Positions 17,942 to 25,072 of a stretch of DNA of 64,000 nucleotides are shown here, piece after piece (position 1 is the stretch's first letter; each line of letters opens with the position of its first letter). The stretch lies in sequence record NC_042056.1, one strand, 5' to 3'. The translations under genes were made by a program, and so were the position numbers. The notes under the pieces were generated by a model. It was not told where the DNA came from. It made no database searches and was given only the letters and a program-made list of their open reading frames with translations.

Positions 17942-18370
17942 ATGAATACACTGTCTTTCGAAGCGGGTAAAGGGTTAAGCGTTAACGGACATCTGGTACC
18001 GGACACCAACAACCACCATTTTGAAAAGCTCTACCGTCGTATCGGGGTAGGGCGTAAGGTCAACCTGAAAATCACCAACGAGATTGCCCTCAATGGCAAC
18101 GTGGCGGCTTTAGGTCCGATGTATGGCTTCCGTCCAAGCCAAGATGCAGCAGCTGCCCTGTTGCAGCACGGTGAGTTTAGCAGCGGTGTGTACGCGTTCC
18201 GTTTACTCGGTTCGCTGCGTCGGGTGTCGAACAAACACGTTGGTCAGGGCATGACACCGACCGTCTTACAGAGCGGTGAGATTATTGTCCTCGTACATTC
18301 CAATCACGAATATAAGTCGGGTTTGGATTTCATGATTAGCTATTCCGAAGTGGAGAGTGCAGATGTCTGA
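17942..18370 (+). CDS. Hypothetical protein
   Basis: 142 aa, AGGGA RBS. Confidence 0.72.
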   Translation: MNTLSFEAGKGLSVNGHLVPDTNNHHFEKLYRRIGVGRKVNLKITNEIALNGNVAALGPMYGFRPSQDAAAALLQHGEFSSGVYAFRLLGSLRRVSNKHVGQGMTPTVLQSGEIIVLVHSNHEYKSGLDFMISYSEVESADV

Positions 18371-19247
18371 TAAAGCTTACCCCGTCTTAAAGAACTTTGA
18401 ACGTGTCGATGCGTGGAACAACGATTCCGACATTTATCGTCACGGTAATGTCCATCAGCAGTCTCTGAAAATGTATCGCCATCTTGGTGAGCTGTGTGAG
18501 GGTGTCCAGAAAATGAAACAGCTGGACGTGGCCTCCGCAATGGGCAAGTTTGTGGTGGCATTGGTCGGCGTGGCGTCCTTTGCAGGGGTTGACGCAGAGG
18601 AGCTGGATGAGCTTTACAGCTACGCGGGCAGAAAAGCTACTCCGTGTACCCCAGCGCAAGCTGCGTGCAATCTGGTGCGTTCTACGACCTCTATGGTTAA
18701 CGATATCAACCAGTGGTTGTCTCCTGCTGGTACTCAGATGGCCAGAGCGATTGCAACGTCCTCTATCTGCGAAGTTTTCTGTTTACTGAAACAGAACGCA
18801 TCCCTCAATGCTATCGTGTTAGACCGCACCATTGAGAACGCCACGAACGTGCTCTGCGCGAAGAAAGGCAAGATGGATGAGTTCGGTTTGTTCCATGCAG
18901 AAGAAACCACCATTGCCACCTCCAGAACCGGTTTTGTCCATCGCGGTGTGGGCGAGTGGATTAAATTGGCCATCAATCGAGATTTGGAAGGTCGCTTCGC
19001 AGAGCTGACCTCGCAGTTGCAGTTCGAATCGAACAGCGGTGAAGTCAGGCTGCGGGTTGAGGAGTCGATGAACAGCCATCTTGAGTTTTCTTTGACCAAA
19101 CACGTTCGCATGAAGCCTACCGTTAAGCACCTTCTTAATGGTCTTACCCCGGCAGTCGTGGTGACGCAAGAAGGTAACCGTCTTGATGTTACGTCTAACA
19201 GCGATCTGCAAACGTTGTTCACTGAATTGGAAAAGGTAACCGAATAA
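18363..19247 (+). CDS. Degenerate MazG-like (all-alpha NTP-PPase fold) protein with extra C-terminal domain
   Basis: Gapless by-eye alignment with 22390-23223, but EEDGE reads RHLGE and DGIGD reads SAMGK. GGAG RBS supports ATG18363. Confidence 0.7.
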
Positions 19248-20308
19248 TGAAACAGTATTTGGAATTGATGCACACCGTGTTGAACGAAGGGCACGAGAAA
19301 GCTGACCGTACCGGCACGGGCACCATCTCTATTTTCGGGCATCAGATGCGTTTTGACCTGCGCAAAGGGTTCCCGCTGGTCACCACCAAAAAGCTGCATC
19401 TGCGCTCTATCATTCATGAGCTATTGTGGTTCCTGAACGGGGATACCAACATTCAGTATCTGAAGGATAACAACGTCAGTATCTGGAATGAATGGTCGGA
19501 TGAAAATGGCGACCTTGGCCCTGTGTACGGACACCAGTGGCGCGAATGGGCAGATGTCAAACTCGTCAGTCACTGGGACGAAGCGTCCAAGAAAGTGTTG
19601 TACGATCGTGGTTATCAGTTCAGCGGGGCTATCAATCGTGATGACCCATCTAAAACGCTGGCGGTGCTTACTAAGCGCTTTGACCAAATCCAAACGGTTA
19701 TTGACCAGTTGAGAAACGACCCGGACAACCGTCGCATCATTGTCAGTGCATGGAACGTGGGGGATTTGGACGACATGGCGCTAGCGCCGTGCCATTCCTT
19801 CTTCCAGTTCTACTCCCGCCCGATGATGGGCAAAGAGCTGGACGTGTATCTGGCGGAGTACCTTAAAACCGATGCGCGTTTGGCAGCGAAACACGCCGAA
19901 CAGGTTGCCCTTTGTGAAGCTGACCCGCAAGGGGATCACGTTAGCTCGCACATGTTCTGCCTGACCAACGATATACCGACGCGTGTACTGTCCTGTCAGC
20001 TTTACCAGCGCAGCGCAGACGTCTTCCTCGGCGTCCCGTTCAACATCGCATCTTACGCGCTGCTGGTTCACATGGTGGCACAACAAGTCAATATGGTGGC
20101 GGGTGATTTCGTCTGGACCGGTGGTGATACCCATCTGTACTCGAACCATCTGGAACAAGCCACGTTGCAGCTCTCCCGTGTGCCGCATGACCTGCCCAAG
20201 CTCGTCATCAAACGTAAGCCCGATTCTATCTTCGACTATAAGTTCGAAGATTTTGAAATCGTCGGTTATGAATCGCATCCAGCGATTAAGGCCCCGGTTG
20301 CTATTTAA
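19247..20308 (+). CDS. thyA: Thymidylate synthase
   Basis: [60 protein letters not shown]. coli-like, with two in-frame insertions. Confidence 0.97.
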
Positions 20309-20317
20309 GGAGCGTGT

Positions 20318-20818
20318 ATGTCTGACAACATACTGAAGTTTCCCGGTAAGCCTAATCCTAACCCTATCACCGTGACGCCCTATGAACACCGCGCCCATTT
20401 CCCCATTCACAGCCGTGACGGGAAGGTGGGTTCGTTTACAGTACCGGTGGGTGATATGTATTGGTGGGCGGCGATTTACGAACAAGTGGCTGCGGCCAAT
20501 CCGTTTTTCGAGAACGTCTTTTACTTTTACTCCGAACCTTACGGCTGGCAAAATCAATCCTACACGAAACGTAAAACATCGTGTGAATTGACAATTGACC
20601 GCCGAACCCTGATAGAGATATTGAAAGTGGTGTCTTATACGCACATTCTGTCTCTTGACGGTTACCTGAACGATGACGATTACGAGATAGTCCATGACAA
20701 TGCCATGATGGTGTTGGCTGACGATTTGGAAATCGATTATGCGATGGGGATCTTCATGTCCCCGACAACGAACCCTGACCGGTTCATCATTAATTTCGTG
20801 GAATGCCATAATGACTGA
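20318..20818 (+). CDS. Hypothetical protein
   Basis: 166 aa, AAGGAG RBS. Confidence 0.78.
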   Translation: MSDNILKFPGKPNPNPITVTPYEHRAHFPIHSRDGKVGSFTVPVGDMYWWAAIYEQVAAANPFFENVFYFYSEPYGWQNQSYTKRKTSCELTIDRRTLIEILKVVSYTHILSLDGYLNDDDYEIVHDNAMMVLADDLEIDYAMGIFMSPTTNPDRFIINFVECHND

Positions 20819-21686
20819 CAAACTCAATAACCTGTATTTCTTCTCTGACCGTTTCTACACCATGCCGGGTGACAACTACTCCTTCGGTATCGTTGCAGCA
20901 AAAGACACGGCCGAAGCCAAGTTGATGCTGGGCACCGAACTGGTTGATGGTCTGCCGCTGGGCACCACTAACGCATCGGGTCAGATTCTGTGTGCGGAAG
21001 AAATCCGTCACATCGATCCGCGCGCTGACAGTGTCGCCAAGACCGTGACCGCTGAGCTGTGGAAACTGAACGACGGTGTGGATGTTTCCGAGCGCGTGAA
21101 GTATCTGCGTGAAACCATTTCGAAAATGCAGGGTATTGACTGTAGCGCACTGGAAGTTGACTTCACCCGCTGTCTGCGTATTCCTGGCGGCTGCACCAGC
21201 ACCGGCAGTGACCTGTGGCGCATCATGGTGAAGCACCCAGACTTCCCACAAACTGTACCGATCATGCTGTCCGCACACGGCGACGGTTCAATCACCGGTA
21301 ACGATGATGTGAACTTCACCAAACTCGGTGAAACCGAAGAGTACACCTACCACGAAAACGTGGATCGTGTGCTGACGCCTGAATGGCTCCTGCTGGACTT
21401 GTTGGAACAGCATGGCCTGACCCCAGAAGACTGGTACGTGATTGCCGGTACGGCGCGTGCAGCAGCCTATAGCGCTACCCCGGTAGACGGCTGGGAAGAA
21501 GTGAACGAAGTGTATGGTCAGAATGAAAGTGCGCACGTCATCCGTTTCTGGCTGAACCCAGACTGGCAGAACCTGATTGTGGCGGCTGTGGCGAAAGTGG
21601 TTGAGTCCATGCCAAAAGAGCCGCTGCCAGAAAACCTCGCCGACGAACTGGCGGGTTCCGAATCTGCGGACGAAGCCGCAGAGTAA
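20811..21686 (+). CDS. Hypothetical protein
   Basis: ATG20811 overlaps the previous stop; 291 aa, acidic tail. Confidence 0.78.
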   Translation: MTDKLNNLYFFSDRFYTMPGDNYSFGIVAAKDTAEAKLMLGTELVDGLPLGTTNASGQILCAEEIRHIDPRADSVAKTVTAELWKLNDGVDVSERVKYLRETISKMQGIDCSALEVDFTRCLRIPGGCTSTGSDLWRIMVKHPDFPQTVPIMLSAHGDGSITGNDDVNFTKLGETEEYTYHENVDRVLTPEWLLLDLLEQHGLTPEDWYVIAGTARAAAYSATPVDGWEEVNEVYGQNESAHVIRFWLNPDWQNLIVAAVAKVVESMPKEPLPENLADELAGSESADEAAE

Positions 21687-21708
21687 CTTAACTGAAAAGG
21701 TGAATAAA

Positions 21709-22161
21709 GTGTCTACGACTCTAATCAATTACGATTTAGTAGTGCAAGAACTTTCCAAGGGGTTGGTTGCCCTCGACAGCGAAACGGCGTTGCGTTGCAA
21801 TATGCTTCCCCATATCGCGCTCAGTGAGTTCCGCACCATTCGTTATGGTGCCGGACGCCAGAACGGGGTAACCGAACATGCTTCAAAATTAGCTGCGGAG
21901 CATAATGGCCCAGCACTGGTTCTTACGCATGCGGTGTCGTTACGGGACGATTTCATGTTTCGTGTCGAAGGTAACTTTCCGGGTAAGGGCAACATCACTT
22001 CGTTATGTGGGTACTTCCCCGACAATTGGCGAGTTGAGAAGTTCAGTCTCGTTATTGTTGATGAAGCCGGTTTCTTCTTTAAGAAATTTGGCTACGATAA
22101 AATCTATCGCAGTCTGGCAACACAAACGACTGACGATGTTGTGATTCACCTGATTAACTGA
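21709..22161 (+). CDS. Small degenerate P-loop-like protein
   Basis: GAGRQNGVT (Walker A-like, lacking Lys) and LVIVDEA (Walker B); AAGGTG RBS supports GTG21709. Confidence 0.6.
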   Translation: MSTTLINYDLVVQELSKGLVALDSETALRCNMLPHIALSEFRTIRYGAGRQNGVTEHASKLAAEHNGPALVLTHAVSLRDDFMFRVEGNFPGKGNITSLCGYFPDNWRVEKFSLVIVDEAGFFFKKFGYDKIYRSLATQTTDDVVIHLIN

Positions 22162-22169
22162 GGTTTGTA

Positions 22170-22334
22170 ATGTCCCAAGTAGAAAAAGAAGTCATCGCAC
22201 AAGCAGATACCACCACACTGGACGATTTGTTCGGGGGTGATATTCCGGGCGTGGATGAGAATGCAGTAGTTGAAGGTGGTGTTGATGCGGCCGCTGAAGA
22301 CGACAACTGCGCAGGCGGTGCCTGCAAAATTTAA
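22170..22334 (+). CDS. 54-aa acidic peptide ending in an NrdA-like redox tail (CAGGACKI)
   Basis: Translated by hand: MSQVEKEVIAQADTTTLDDLFGGDIPGVDENAVVEGGVDAAAEDDNCAGGACKI*. GAGG RBS at 22160-22163 and its own downstream hairpin; fills the gap between two genes. Confidence 0.85.
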   Translation: MSQVEKEVIAQADTTTLDDLFGGDIPGVDENAVVEGGVDAAAEDDNCAGGACKI

Positions 22335-22341
22335 CAAGAGC

Positions 22342-22375
22342 GGGTGTCCTTATGGACACCCCTATTTCATTTTTT
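22342..22375 (+). terminator. Probable intrinsic terminator
   Basis: GGGTGTCC-TTAT-GGACACCC then CTATTTCATTTTTT. Confidence 0.7.
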
Positions 22376-22389
22376 AAGGACTATCAGAA

Positions 22390-23223
22390 ATGCAACAGAC
22401 TTTTGAGTTACCGATTGAACACAAAGCCATCATCCTGAATAGCGCTATCTTAGATTTCGTCATGCCTCAGTTGGCGGCTGCCGGTAAACGGATGTCTCGC
22501 ATTACGCGTCTGGCACTCAGCAGTGAAGGCCCACAGACGCTGGTTAACGGTTTTACCTTTGAAGGTGAACCGGCAGAATTCCACGCGATGTTGCGTTATC
22601 ACACCGCGCTCGACTTCCACAAAGAGCCGGTCTACCATAACCGCATCGTCCCGCTGTACCGTGTGTCACAATGTGTGGCCAAAGTCATTGGCTGGTCAAC
22701 TGACCGCGGTATTCTGGAAAACGGCCGTTGGGACTCACAGGGTACGAAGCTGTATGAAGAAGACGGTGAAGCCGCAACTGGCGTGGGTAAAAACAAAAAG
22801 CGTCTGATCATCGACGGTATCGGTGATGCGCTGGTTGTACTCGTTAACGTACTGGAACTGACCAGTATTGATGCCGCAGAAATTGCGCACATTTATCAGC
22901 TGGTACGTGACACCAAAACCGTGGTGGATAACCCGCACTACCATTTCCACAAAATGCGTAAGAACCTGACCGAAGTGGTCGATGTGGTTTATGAATGTGA
23001 AGCCATCGATTCACCGAAGAAAGTGGAAATCGGTCGCTTAACGCACGATGAGCGTCAGCAGATGTTGGGTCATGCGCAGCAGGCAATCCATCATGCCAAC
23101 CAACTGGCACGCCATTACGATTACTCGCTGGATGAGTGCTTCTCTCTGGCGTGGGATGAAATCAAAGACCGTAAAGGTTTCCTGAACGCTGACGGTGTGT
23201 TCATCAAAGAAGCCGACGCTTAA
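22390..23223 (+). CDS. mazG: MazG-like nucleotide pyrophosphohydrolase
   Basis: W.TDRG, Q.TKLYEEDGE, IIDGIGDALVVL, LDECFSLAWDEIKDRKG..GVFIKE; acidic motif intact; ~90-aa N-terminal extension. Confidence 0.85.
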   Translation: MQQTFELPIEHKAIILNSAILDFVMPQLAAAGKRMSRITRLALSSEGPQTLVNGFTFEGEPAEFHAMLRYHTALDFHKEPVYHNRIVPLYRVSQCVAKVIGWSTDRGILENGRWDSQGTKLYEEDGEAATGVGKNKKRLIIDGIGDALVVLVNVLELTSIDAAEIAHIYQLVRDTKTVVDNPHYHFHKMRKNLTEVVDVVYECEAIDSPKKVEIGRLTHDERQQMLGHAQQAIHHANQLARHYDYSLDECFSLAWDEIKDRKGFLNADGVFIKEADA

Positions 23224-23255
23224 TTCACGTCCACTAACAATGCAGGAGTAGGACA

Positions 23256-24110
23256 ATGGAATACCAATTATTTCTCATCACGAACGACTTTACCAAATCC
23301 TTTGTGGACGAGTCGTTTCATGCCACGGTAGTTGCGCCGACAGAGGCCGCTGCTCGTTGGATTGTTGCCCAGCAATGTACTGACCTTCCGATGAATGAAG
23401 TGCAGGCTGCGGTAGCTTTTGCAGTGGGTAAGATTGACGCCCCTGCCGAGGGAATAATTTCTTTTGAGTTCGGGAAACGTAATCGCTTCCCACTCGTTAA
23501 CCTCGACGCCTACAAGCGCCGTGAAGAGTTCGTTGAAGTTGAGCTACACGGCGGGATACAACCGACGCACGATATTCATCCGCCGGTGCCGGGTGCGGTG
23601 GTCAAATGTTTCGCGAGCAAAGAGCATCCGCGAATCGTGTTGATCCGCAGCACACTCAAAACCAGCACGCCGACCCTCATTGAAGAAGTGGGTGTGACGA
23701 ACGAAGCCACATCGGTTCAGCTTTACACTGTTCATTCGCCGTCGGCGTATGCCGAGGTGGCAAAAGGTGAAGTCTTCACCACTGAGTACATCAATCTGTT
23801 TGGTTGTGAAGATGTCCTGCTGTTCCGCACGCTCATCATTCGCAACACCGAGCTGGCGTATCAGGACAAGCGCACGGAAGGGTTATTGCAGGAACTGCAA
23901 TCATTCTTCACCGAAGGGGGCGATCGTAACAGCATGGATGTGGGTATCAGCTACTATCCGGGCCAGAAGTTGACCATTGCTGATCCCACCAAGGTGGTGC
24001 TGTGGGTCATGTCGTTACCGCAGGTCATCACCCTCGACCGGACGATTACGGAAGAGAGCCTCAAGCCGATTGCAGGCACTAACTGCCACACCCTGAACGC
24101 GGGAGAGTAA
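23256..24110 (+). CDS. Hypothetical protein
   Basis: 284 aa, AGGA RBS. Confidence 0.78.
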   Translation: MEYQLFLITNDFTKSFVDESFHATVVAPTEAAARWIVAQQCTDLPMNEVQAAVAFAVGKIDAPAEGIISFEFGKRNRFPLVNLDAYKRREEFVEVELHGGIQPTHDIHPPVPGAVVKCFASKEHPRIVLIRSTLKTSTPTLIEEVGVTNEATSVQLYTVHSPSAYAEVAKGEVFTTEYINLFGCEDVLLFRTLIIRNTELAYQDKRTEGLLQELQSFFTEGGDRNSMDVGISYYPGQKLTIADPTKVVLWVMSLPQVITLDRTITEESLKPIAGTNCHTLNAGE

Positions 24111-24612: not shown

Positions 24613-25024
24613 TGCTGATAGTCAGACCATCAGCGTAAACGGAAAGAACTGGGGTAACCTCGGATTGGCAGCATGGGTGCTGGAACGTCTGGCGAACCGC
24701 TCTACCCGTTTCGGGGGTCTCGACTTTGTCATCATCGACGAACCGCTCAAGTACGAACCGTGGCAGAATTTTCATGCCGTCGAAATGTACAGTGCGATTC
24801 CGAACATGGTAATCTCAAAGGTGCTGGCAGAACAGAACTACCGTGGTGGTTTTACCAACCCGCATTGGGCACTGACCTCGAGTCAGAAGTACGGCATTGA
24901 AGTGCCGTTGCTGAACAAAGTCCCACCGGACATTGGTGAAGATGCATTGGTGTTCTTCTTCTCCTACGACCACGCTGAACCAAACAGCGAGTTCCAGTGG
25001 ACGATGCTACATCAGATGCGTTAA
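24581..25024 (+). CDS. Hypothetical protein
   Basis: GGAGA RBS; start 24578 or 24581; overlaps the previous gene's end. Confidence 0.7.
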   Translation: MSKKKNQLTFNADSQTISVNGKNWGNLGLAAWVLERLANRSTRFGGLDFVIIDEPLKYEPWQNFHAVEMYSAIPNMVISKVLAEQNYRGGFTNPHWALTSSQKYGIEVPLLNKVPPDIGEDALVFFFSYDHAEPNSEFQWTMLHQMR

Positions 25025-25072
25025 ATAAAAAGACTACCTACTCCCGAAGGAGTAGGTAGCTTTATTTTTTTT
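25025..25072. terminator. Bidirectional intrinsic terminator
   Basis: CTACCTACTCC-CGAA-GGAGTAGGTAG (25034-25059), same stem as 8546-8571, flanked by A and T tracts. Confidence 0.9.

What the first reader, a model, noticed from the sequence alone, without database searches (positions are those of the whole stretch)
22170..22334. Stand-alone mini-gene copying the redox-active C-terminal tail of ribonucleotide reductase NrdA
Seen: a 54-aa acidic ORF, missed by the track, with its own GAGG RBS and downstream hairpin, ending AAAEDDNCAGGACKI*. Established: E. coli NrdA ends QDDGCESGACKI, and its Cys754/Cys759 pair on a flexible acidic tail shuttles electrons from thioredoxin/glutaredoxin to the active site. 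Genetic work on yeast Rnr1 indicates this tail can act across protomers. The C-x4-C spacing, the terminal GACKI and the acidic linker all match, yet no other NrdA sequence flanks it. Inference: a free tail peptide could boost re-reduction of host NrdA in trans to raise dNTP supply, or act as a decoy for Trx/Grx or for NrdA-tail binders. Its place among thyA and two MazG genes fits a dNTP role. I know of no described function for such a gene.
Basis: partly seen in the sequence, partly recalled or inferred. Interest (0 to 1): 0.85.

Follow-up and report, generated by a model that had tools for sequence, protein, structure and literature searches.

The report
Phage mini-protein copying RNR redox tail
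A real, conserved 54-residue phage protein ends in a near-exact copy of the electron-carrying tail of bacterial ribonucleotide reductase. It belongs to a large, unstudied family in phages and some bacteria and probably plugs into the host's DNA-precursor enzyme, though whether it helps or blocks that enzyme is unknown.

Summary
Window 22170-22334(+) is a 54-aa acidic ORF with a GAGG ribosome-binding site and a terminator-like hairpin. It is gp246 of Erwinia phage Machina, annotated 'hypothetical protein'.

Its last 13 residues match the extreme C-terminus of a class Ia NrdA at 11 of 13 positions, and it shares E. coli NrdA's C-x4-C-x2-end register.

It is not a remnant:
- It belongs to a family of at least 321 protein clusters, all unnamed.
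- Synonymous sites are near saturation while the tail is fixed.
- AlphaFold predicts disorder.

Members occur throughout SPN3US-like jumbo phages, in several uncultured phage lineages beside thymidylate synthase, dNMP kinase or DNA polymerase genes, and in bacterial chromosomes. In Neisseria the gene sits inside the isc operon.

Both complete carrier phage genomes checked lack class Ia NrdA/NrdB, and no viral contig carries both a tailed NrdA and a mini-gene.

The tail is modular, fused to unrelated domains. Some members also begin with an exact copy of the NrdB C-terminal motif that binds NrdA; Machina's does not.

Best reading: a trans-acting mimic of the NrdA tail working on the host RNR and thioredoxin/glutaredoxin relay. 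Whether it stimulates or inhibits is unresolved. No literature describes it.

The parts
22160..22163 (+). GAGG ribosome-binding site, 6 nt upstream of the ATG. It overlaps the TGA stop of gp245, which suggests translational coupling.
   Evidence: Sequence read directly; gp245 ends at 22161.
22170..22334 (+). CDS of the 54-aa mini-protein (Machina gp246, YP_009617163.1). It has 13 acidic and 2 basic residues and is predicted to be disordered.
   Evidence: AlphaFold2 mean pLDDT 55, pTM 0.15. phrog_14561, E 4e-31.
22218..22256 (+). Residues 17-29, an acidic/hydrophobic segment ending in I25-P26-G27-x-D29. These are invariant in 12 of 12 SPN3US-clade orthologs. It is the only predicted helical turn (17-21) and a candidate second binding motif.
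   Evidence: Alignment A1; AF2. The NrdB-tail likeness is not significant here, p 0.56.
22269..22286 (+). Residues 34-39 (V-E-G-G-V-D). G37 and D39 are invariant in 28 of 28 sequences, phage and Neisseriaceae/Moraxellaceae. This marks homology beyond the tail.
   Evidence: Alignment A3.
22296..22331 (+). Residues 43-54, the NrdA-type redox tail: an acidic run, then Cys47, four residues, Cys52, then K-I and the end.
   Evidence: C47, G49, G50, A51, C52, K53 and I54 are invariant in 32 of 32. Matches NrdA ends. pN 0-0.12 against pS 0.3-1.0.
22342..22377 (+). Terminator-like hairpin (22342-22361) plus a T-rich run. It closes the thyA-to-gp246 gene string.
19247..20308 (+). Context: thymidylate synthase ThyA.
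   Evidence: Pfam PF00303, E 5e-116.
18357..19247 (+). Context: MazG-like protein (phrog_10269, with weaker hits to MazG families).
20811..21686 (+). Context: gp244 (phrog_10453, unknown function). Its homolog is fused in frame to a mini-protein in locus L063.
21709..22161 (+). Context: gp245 (phrog_2586, unknown function), directly upstream.
22390..23223 (+). Context: MazG nucleotide pyrophosphohydrolase-like protein (phrog_7855).

Best explanation
**What it is (well supported).** gp246 is a genuine small, intrinsically disordered, strongly acidic protein. Its C-terminal dozen residues are a functional-grade copy of the flexible redox tail of class Ia ribonucleotide reductase alpha (NrdA) of the E. 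coli/Neisseria type: an acidic run, C-x4-C, then two residues and the end.

**How it works (inferred).** The only known partners of that tail are thioredoxin/glutaredoxin, which reduce it, and the NrdA active-site cysteine pair, which it reduces. The phage has no RNR of its own but carries thyA, DHFR, dTMP kinase and MazG-like genes.

I therefore propose that the protein enters the host's Trx/Grx -> tail -> active-site relay as an extra, untethered dithiol arm. It would be recharged by host Trx/Grx and delivered to host NrdA, with the conserved upstream acidic/hydrophobic segment supplying extra affinity. The likely net effect is support of re-reduction, and so of dNDP output, during phage DNA synthesis.

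**Shown:** the sequence mimicry, purifying selection, the wide family, absence of phage NrdA/NrdB, the nucleotide-metabolism neighbourhood, and predicted disorder.

**Inferred:** translation, binding partners, and above all the sign of the effect.
For: **Tail identity.**
- 11 of 13 residues match the end of a solved NrdA chain.
- The register is the same as E. coli Cys754/Cys759.
- 108 of 120 bacterial genome matches to the tail pattern are NrdA ends. They include Erwiniaceae (Rosenbergiella...EDDGCAGGACKI), Pectobacterium, Yersinia and Proteus.
- C-x4-C is a minority tail type among class I RNRs (PMC9669993). The likeness is therefore specific to the host-type enzyme.

**Selection.**
- The tail columns are invariant in 32 of 32 diverse members, and both Cys are present in 45 of 45 database homologs.
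- Over the last 30 codons, Caitlin against CR5 shows 20 synonymous and 2 non-synonymous differences.

**Carriers lack RNR.**
- Machina and Alcaligenes phage CASP1 have no class Ia NrdA/NrdB.
- 0 of 89 IMG/VR contigs carry both a tailed NrdA and a mini-gene.

**Context in three phage lineages.**
- thyA plus MazG.
- dNMP kinase plus ThyX plus RdgC.
- DNA polymerase A plus 5'-3' exonuclease.

**Precedents.**
- A separately encoded subunit, NrdJb, 'mediates efficient reductive dithiol exchange' for a split class II RNR (PMC4520616).
- Tail electron transfer can occur between subunits (PMC5704485).
- A second reductant acting while the tail is away raises RNR activity (PMC4078304).

**No phage reductant.** A crude regex scan found no Trx/Grx-like CxxC motif in small Machina ORFs, so any recharging would rely on host reductants.
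Against: - Host NrdA already has tethered tails at high local concentration. A free peptide needs real affinity to matter, and none has been measured.
- In several subfamilies the N-terminus is an exact copy of the NrdB C-terminal end that docks on NrdA. That would compete with NrdB and argues for inhibition. For Machina itself this likeness is not significant (p 0.56).
- Neisseriaceae homologs, homologous beyond the tail, lie inside the isc Fe-S operon. This hints at a different client.
- The tail is fused to unrelated domains. That fits a tethering or recruiting tag as well as a shuttle.
- The phiR1-37 homolog g117 has near-zero RNA-seq counts.
- There is no expression data for Machina.
- E. 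coli and Salmonella host tails differ from the phage tails at one of the four positions between the two Cys.
- The Erwinia amylovora NrdA itself was not retrieved.
Confidence: 0.38

Rival explanations
1. Inhibitor of class Ia RNR. The protein occupies the sites on NrdA that normally receive NrdA's own tail and, in members with an NrdB-tail copy, the NrdB tail. It would block re-reduction and/or holoenzyme assembly, as a bivalent, Sml1-like small disordered inhibitor used for host shut-off or dNTP-pool control.
For: - L020 starts with M followed by SDFDDFDL, identical to the last eight residues of the NrdB in L183.
- L014 carries DFDDFEL, identical to the NrdB ends in L206 and L122.
- In a position-weight test against composition-preserving shuffles, 6 of 158 family members reach p<0.01 and 20 reach p<0.05.
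- With an earlier, smaller matrix, 6 of about 22 subfamilies reached p<=0.012.
- Free NrdB C-terminal peptides are classical competitive inhibitors of RNR assembly (established knowledge).
- Small disordered RNR inhibitors exist in yeast; Sml1 binds R1 (PMC11941123).
- Chromosomal copies in Neisseria would suit a regulator.
Against: - Machina and CASP1 have no RNR of their own, so blocking the host enzyme would cut their dNTP supply.
- The NrdB-like motif is not significant in the Machina clade (p 0.56) or the 60-kb group (p about 0.7-0.8).
- The motif is internal, whereas NrdB tails end with a free carboxylate.
- Strict retention of both Cys and of all flanking tail residues suggests redox competence rather than mere occupancy.
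Confidence: 0.25
2. A generic portable dithiol arm rechargeable by Trx/Grx. The tail is the module recognised by Trx/Grx, and the N-terminal part or fused domain selects the client. The client need not be RNR: it could be IscS/IscU persulfide chemistry in Neisseria, or another phage or host protein in Machina.
For: - Modularity: the tail is fused to an N4 gp49/Sf6 gp66-family domain (L086), a zinc ribbon (L070, phrog_20277), a gp244 homolog (L063) and unknown domains (L024, L043, L066).
- The Neisseria gene lies between iscS and iscU.
- IscU(1-47)+mini fusions exist, P0084 and P0103.
Against: - The tail is copied from NrdA down to the last residue. Phage contexts are nucleotide or replication modules, not Fe-S or redox modules.
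- NrdB-tail copies in some members point back to NrdA as the client.
- The Neisseria and Machina proteins share the upstream region, so a single common client is more economical, and both hosts have class Ia RNR.
Confidence: 0.15
3. Decoy for thioredoxin/glutaredoxin. As a pseudo-substrate, it would draw off or occupy host Trx/Grx and so change the host redox state or the supply of reductant to host enzymes.
For: The tail and its acidic approach are what Trx/Grx recognise on NrdA (established knowledge). The protein is small, cheap to make and disordered.
Against: - A substrate that is turned over catalytically does not sequester its reductase.
- This does not explain the conserved upstream motifs, the fusions, or the nucleotide-metabolism context.
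Confidence: 0.07
4. A non-functional leftover of a lost phage nrdA gene, or a spurious ORF.
For: - Some phage nrdA genes are split into pieces (L015, L027, L031, L050, L062).
- The phiR1-37 homolog is hardly transcribed.
Against: - The gene has its own start and RBS, and there is no NrdA-like sequence upstream.
- It is conserved across at least 46 GenBank phage records and at least 321 protein clusters.
- pN is far below pS.
- It has conserved non-NrdA motifs and chromosomal homologs in operons.
Confidence: 0.02

Closest known systems
C-terminal redox tail of class Ia RNR alpha (NrdA; E. coli Cys754/Cys759)
   Same: The last 11-13 residues share an acidic run, C-x4-C, a two-residue end and a flexible character. 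They are 11 of 13 identical to the 7mdi_A end and 8 of 11 identical to E. coli.
   Different: No catalytic barrel and no ATP cone. It is a free 54-aa polypeptide with its own conserved upstream motifs, encoded by a genome without any RNR.
NrdJb, the separately encoded tail subunit of split class II RNR (Pseudomonas aeruginosa)
   Same: The redox Cys-pair module of an RNR is supplied as a separate polypeptide that mediates dithiol exchange (PMC4520616; PMC9669993).
   Different: NrdJb is a folded protein (IscU-like plus zinc-finger domains). It is encoded next to a tail-less NrdJa and is essential to it. Here the protein is disordered, class Ia-type, viral, and the presumed target already has its own tail.
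Sml1 (and Spd1/Hug1/Dif1), small disordered RNR regulators of fungi
   Same: Small, disordered, and acting on the large subunit. By established knowledge, Sml1 interferes with the function of the R1 C-terminal tail. Sml1 binding to R1 is cited in PMC11941123.
   Different: No sequence relationship: there is no Pfam hit at E<=0.1. The fungal proteins do not copy the tail. Nothing of this kind has been described for bacteria or phages in the literature searched.
NrdB C-terminal tail and the inhibitory peptides derived from it
   Same: Some family members (L014, L020, also L012/L076 and L073) begin with a stretch identical or very similar to NrdB ends.
   Different: In the mini-proteins the motif is N-terminal or internal, not a free C-terminus. 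In Machina's own protein the likeness is not above chance.
PHROG families phrog_14561, phrog_24014, phrog_38753, phrog_20277
   Same: gp246 matches phrog_14561 end to end (E 4e-31) and matches the others through the tail.
   Different: All four are listed as 'unknown function'. They were not linked to one another or to NrdA.

Membership tests
Class Ia RNR alpha subunit (NrdA) | Ten-stranded catalytic barrel (Pfam Ribonuc_red_lgC/lgN), with or without an ATP cone | tested here: not met
   No Pfam family at E<=0.1. The protein is 54 aa. tblastn with 756-aa and 761-aa NrdA proteins aligns only the last ~20 residues.
Class Ia RNR alpha subunit (NrdA) | C-terminal flexible tail with a redox Cys pair (C-x4-C in the E. 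coli type) at the extreme end | tested here: met
Split-RNR tail subunit (NrdJb type) | Encoded beside a tail-less catalytic subunit in the same genome | tested here: not met
   No NrdA/NrdB anywhere in Machina or CASP1. No NrdA body lies in the flanks of any mini-gene locus.
Split-RNR tail subunit (NrdJb type) | [quoted passage not shown] | tested here: not met
   AF2 predicts disorder. Only distant members have a zinc ribbon (L070) or an IscU fragment (P0084, P0103).
Sml1-type RNR inhibitors | Sequence membership of the Sml1 family | tested here: not met
   No Pfam hit.
Sml1-type RNR inhibitors | Binds the RNR large subunit and inhibits it | not testable with these tools
   No multimer modelling or binding data were available.
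Thioredoxin/glutaredoxin superfamily | Thioredoxin fold with a CxxC active site | tested here: not met
   The spacing is C-x4-C, no fold is predicted and there is no Pfam hit.
phrog_14561 (phage proteins of unknown function) | Full-length match to the family profile | tested here: met
   E 4.2e-31, profile positions 1-51 of 51.
RiPP precursor peptide | Adjacent modifying enzyme(s), plus a core peptide that varies under a conserved leader | tested here: not met
   Neighbours are thyA, MazG-like and unknown proteins. Here the C-terminus is the invariant part and the N-terminus varies. The phage's radical SAM genes lie about 58 kb away.
Acidic Fe-S assembly accessory proteins (IscX/CyaY-like) | Family membership or fold | tested here: not met
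   No Pfam hit and no predicted fold. The only link is operon position in Neisseria.

The most novel reading that the evidence does not exclude
Phages, and independently Neisseriaceae, Moraxellaceae and some Alteromonadales, encode a family of disordered mimics of RNR subunit tails. Each always carries the NrdA redox tail and sometimes also the NrdB docking tail. These proteins would bind class Ia NrdA and control its re-reduction or assembly. That would be the first protein-level RNR regulator described for bacteria and the first viral mimic of an RNR tail. Its portable tail module could also tether other proteins to RNR or to Trx/Grx.
Probability: 0.3. Interest if true: 0.9.

Novelty: new variant of a known kind. 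Interest (0 to 1): 0.8.

Why it matters
RNR sets the dNTP supply for both host and phage, and recent work shows that bacterial immunity senses phage-driven dNTP changes (PMC12265719). No phage protein is known to act on host RNR through its flexible tails, and no bacterial protein-level RNR regulator of this sort is known.

A short, portable motif that addresses the NrdA active site or its reductants would have three consequences:
- It would explain how RNR-less jumbo phages secure or steer dNTP synthesis.
- It would give the RNR field a natural trans-acting tail, and in some members a natural two-tail chimera, with which to study how the tail reaches the active site.
- It would assign a testable role to hundreds of 'hypothetical' small proteins, including one inside the Neisseria isc operon.

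Tried and rejected
**Searches that found little**
- Full-length phmmer against PDB gave no hit. Only the last 25 residues recover NrdA.
- A single-sequence search of 5.8 billion proteins found 2 hits, and of 1.84 billion representatives 12 hits. The family became visible only with the DNA tail pattern and a profile.
- The E. coli genome DNA search did not hit nrdA, so there is no recent DNA transfer from nrdA. It hit a jumbo-phage-like 'plasmid' instead.
- A tail-independent search for relatives (alignment A1, tail removed) confirmed only 7 loci. All 7 carry the tail. It is a weak but unbiased check.
- tblastn of two uncultured subfamilies against GenBank phages gave nothing, or only weak cross-hits to Asesino.
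- Literature searches for the motif string and for phage/RNR-tail terms found nothing relevant.

**The NrdB-tail likeness for Machina**
- It was suggestive with a 12-tail matrix (p about 0.09).
- It disappeared with an 80-tail matrix (p 0.56). I rejected it for this gene and kept it for other subfamilies.

**gp244, the fusion partner in L063**
- No PDB sequence hit and only 3 homologs.
- The AF2 model was moderate, pLDDT 62.
- No fold match at E<=0.001. This was a dead end.

**Readings rejected**
- nrdA remnant, RiPP precursor, Trx/Grx family member and DNA mimic. The last does not explain an exact NrdA tail.

- Slips: while thinking I recalled three short peptide strings from memory: a mammalian R2-derived inhibitory heptapeptide, the tip of the E. 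coli SSB C-terminus, and the end of E. coli NrdB. The NrdB end was later obtained from a tool.
- In one search the five fetched pieces of the deposited phage record were read end to end in memory for an ORF scan. Nothing was altered or saved.

Full report
**Identity of the window and the ORF**

Window 21000-24000 is 100% identical to Erwinia phage Machina (NC_042056.1, 241,654 bp, genus Machinavirus), an SPN3US-like jumbo phage. The ORF at 22170-22334(+) is present as described. It is annotated in RefSeq as gp246, YP_009617163.1, hypothetical protein, so it is not unannotated in the public record.

- GAGG sits 6 nt before the ATG and overlaps the stop of gp245.
- An 8-bp hairpin followed by a T-rich run lies just downstream.
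- The protein has 13 acidic and 2 basic residues.
- It has no Pfam family.
- AlphaFold2, run with a 28-sequence alignment, predicts disorder: mean pLDDT 55, pTM 0.15, one helical turn at residues 17-21.

**The tail likeness is real and specific**

- The last 25 residues find, as best PDB match, the extreme C-terminus of a 773-aa NrdA chain (7mdi_A), 11 of 13 identical. The E-value of 0.96 is weak on its own. The same ending occurs in the Neisseria gonorrhoeae NrdA in L168.
- I fetched E. coli nrdA with tools. It ends DDGCESGACKI with Cys754 and Cys759, the same C-x4-C-x2-end register as Cys47/Cys52 here.
- The back-translated pattern for C-x-G-G-A-C-K-I-stop occurs once in the window and in none of 100 shuffles.
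They include Erwiniaceae (Rosenbergiella), Pectobacterium, Yersinia, Proteus, Xenorhabdus and Photorhabdus.
- Burnim et al. report that most class I RNRs have CXXC and only a minority have CXXXXC, as E. coli does (PMC9669993). The copy is therefore of the host-type tail.

**It belongs to a large family**

The 89 IMG/VR matches to the pattern divide as follows:

| Class | Loci |
|---|---|
| Small acidic ORFs of 36-86 aa | 49 |
| Tail attached to other N-terminal parts | 8 |
| NrdA genes or pieces of split NrdA genes | 30 |
| Probable chance matches | 2 |

- A profile of 32 diverse members retrieves 321 clusters (90% identity) of 30-95-aa proteins from 5.8 billion. Every source name is 'hypothetical' or 'uncharacterized'.
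- PHROGs holds the family as phrog_14561, 24014, 38753 and 20277, all 'unknown function'.
- Cultured carriers include the whole SPN3US-like clade, 46 GenBank records on Salmonella, Erwinia, Cronobacter, Escherichia, Pectobacterium and Proteus. In SPN3US the gene is ACQ60_gp032 in the same thyA...mazG synteny.
- Further cultured carriers are Klebsiella jumbo phages (FBKp24, Centimanus), Yersinia phage phiR1-37, a Stenotrophomonas phage and Alcaligenes phage CASP1.

**Selection**

- In alignment A2 the columns C47, G49, G50, A51, C52, K53 and I54 are invariant in 32 of 32. That set was ascertained through the motif.
- In the 45 homologs I read out from the profile search, where the first Cys was not forced by the word index, both Cys are present in all 45. 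One ends in L instead of I.
- More distant members show single changes that keep the Cys pair: CASP1 ends C-D-G-G-A-C-I-I and phiR1-37 g117 ends C-D-G-G-G-C-K-I.
- Among SPN3US-clade orthologs, synonymous sites of the last 30 codons are near saturation (pS 0.5-0.9) while pN is 0.03-0.25. Caitlin against CR5 shows 20 synonymous and 2 non-synonymous differences.
- Upstream of the tail, the clade keeps I25-P26-G27-x-D29 and G37/D39 invariant.
- A search with the tail removed found only loci that carry the tail, 7 of 7.

**Carriers and context**

- Machina has no annotated RNR, and tblastn finds no NrdA or NrdB body. It does encode thyA, DHFR, dTMP kinase and two MazG-like proteins.
- CASP1 (47 kb, complete) likewise lacks NrdA/NrdB and has ThyX.
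- No IMG/VR contig appears twice among the 89. So none carries both a tailed NrdA and a mini-gene, although 24 mini-gene or fusion contigs and 8 NrdA contigs are 180 kb or longer.
- Neighbours of mini-genes in other phage lineages are a dNMP kinase, ThyX and RdgC in a group of roughly 60-kb contigs, and DNA polymerase A with a 5'-3' exonuclease in another group.
- A crude motif scan finds no Trx/Grx-like CxxC protein among small Machina ORFs.

**Modularity and a second mimicry**

The tail is appended to unrelated parts:
- an N4 gp49/Sf6 gp66-family domain (L086);
- a zinc ribbon (L070);
- unknown domains (L024/L040, L043, L066/L080);
- a homolog of Machina gp244 (L063).

Many members begin with an acidic/aromatic stretch. 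I extracted 85 NrdB C-terminal ends from the fetched loci.
- L020 begins, after its Met, with the same eight residues that end the NrdB of L183.
- L014 contains the seven residues that end the NrdB of L206 and L122.
- In a position-weight test against composition-preserving shuffles, 6 of 158 members reach p<0.01 and 20 reach p<0.05.
- Machina (p 0.56), SPN3US and the 60-kb group do not.

The NrdB-tail copy is therefore real in some subfamilies and unsupported for this gene. It still matters, because NrdB's tail and NrdA's tail share one partner: NrdA.

**Bacterial copies**

- Twelve of the 120 bacterial matches are stand-alone small ORFs.
- In Neisseria the gene lies between iscS and iscU and runs in the same direction as the operon: iscR-iscS-mini-iscU-iscA-hscB in L030, with an extra ORF in L108.
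- Two metagenomic clusters are IscU(1-47)+mini fusions.
- Neisseriaceae and Moraxellaceae proteins align with the phage proteins beyond the tail.
- In Alishewanella the gene lies next to a gene for an amidohydrolase-family protein, which I suspect is dihydroorotase.
[quoted passage not shown] This is a recurring association that I cannot explain.

**Mechanism**

The known partners of the NrdA tail are Trx/Grx and the NrdA active site (established knowledge; PMC4078304; PMC5704485). Several facts make a trans-acting extra tail plausible:
- NrdJb is a separately encoded tail subunit (PMC4520616).
- Tail electron transfer can occur between subunits.
- A second reductant acting while the tail is away adds to activity.

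For an RNR-less phage whose mini-gene sits in a dNTP-synthesis module, I rank the readings as follows.

| Reading | Confidence |
|---|---|
| Auxiliary dithiol arm for host NrdA | 0.38 |
| Sml1-like or bivalent inhibitor | 0.25 |
| Generic Trx/Grx-rechargeable arm for another client | 0.15 |
| Trx/Grx decoy | 0.07 |
| Remnant or spurious ORF | 0.02 |

Points against my first choice:
- the competition from NrdA's own tethered tails;
- the NrdB-tail copies;
- the isc context;
- the near-zero RNA-seq counts of phiR1-37 g117 (3.9, 1.5 and 1.2, against hundreds to thousands for its neighbours; PMC4848604 supplement);
- the lack of any expression data for Machina.

**Novelty**

I found no paper describing such a protein. 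The closest known things are the NrdA tail itself, NrdJb, and the fungal Sml1-type disordered inhibitors. I file it as a new variant of a known kind (a separately encoded RNR tail module, or a small disordered RNR effector), not as a member of any of them.

In one search the five fetched pieces of the deposited phage record were scanned end to end in memory. Nothing was changed or saved.

Noticed in passing
L002 (NZ_CP173450.1, 185237-197277): A 221,873-bp circular 'plasmid' of a clinical E. coli urine isolate has SPN3US-like jumbo-phage gene order: thyA, a 47-aa mini-gene, a MazG-like gene and a giant transglycosylase-domain protein. It looks like a jumbo phage genome recorded as a plasmid.
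   Followed up: partly
L030:1411-4914; L108; L132: In Neisseria the mini-gene sits inside the Fe-S assembly operon (iscR-iscS-mini-iscU-iscA-hscB). L030 is catalogued as a viral contig in IMG/VR, although this stretch is plainly chromosomal.
   Followed up: partly
P0084, P0103 (metagenomic proteins, 89 aa): These are in-frame fusions of the first 47 residues of IscU with a mini-protein. They echo the IscU-like domains reported ahead of the Cys pair in class II RNR tails (PMC9669993).
   Followed up: no
L020:4278-4424(-); L014:2181-2345(+); NrdB ends in L183, L206, L122: Some mini-proteins start with a stretch identical to the last 7-8 residues of NrdB. These members combine copies of both RNR subunit tails in one roughly 50-aa protein.
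   Followed up: partly
L063:79-1146(+): In a 237-kb SPN3US-like contig, the homolog of Machina gp244 (phrog_10453) is fused in frame to the mini-protein, and the gp245 homolog is missing. gp244 has no recognisable fold.
   Followed up: partly
L094:42464-43255(-), i.e. Machina record 142464-143255, outside the window: Two adjacent ~130-aa proteins (gp176, gp177) end in Cys-rich repeats and lie close to two radical SAM proteins (gp172, gp173). The arrangement resembles a peptide-modification cluster.
   Followed up: no
L227:5010-5165(+) (phiR1-37 g117): This distant family member has a variant tail (C-D-G-G-G-C-K-I), its own RBS and a terminator. Published RNA-seq gives it almost no reads. phiR1-37 DNA carries deoxyuridine in place of thymidine.
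   Followed up: partly
window 25033-25060: A strong two-way terminator-like hairpin (11-12 bp) lies between the convergent gene blocks that end at 25024(+) and 25075(-).
   Followed up: no
L179 (JYOE01000079.1, labelled Terrabacter sp. 28): This 778-bp contig carries a Neisseria-type IscU fragment and a mini-gene. It is probably contamination of that assembly.
   Followed up: no
L015, L027, L031, L046, L050, L052, L055, L062, L088: Many phage nrdA genes with this tail are interrupted: tblastn aligns them in two or three separated pieces. This is consistent with introns, inteins or inserted endonuclease genes.
   Followed up: no
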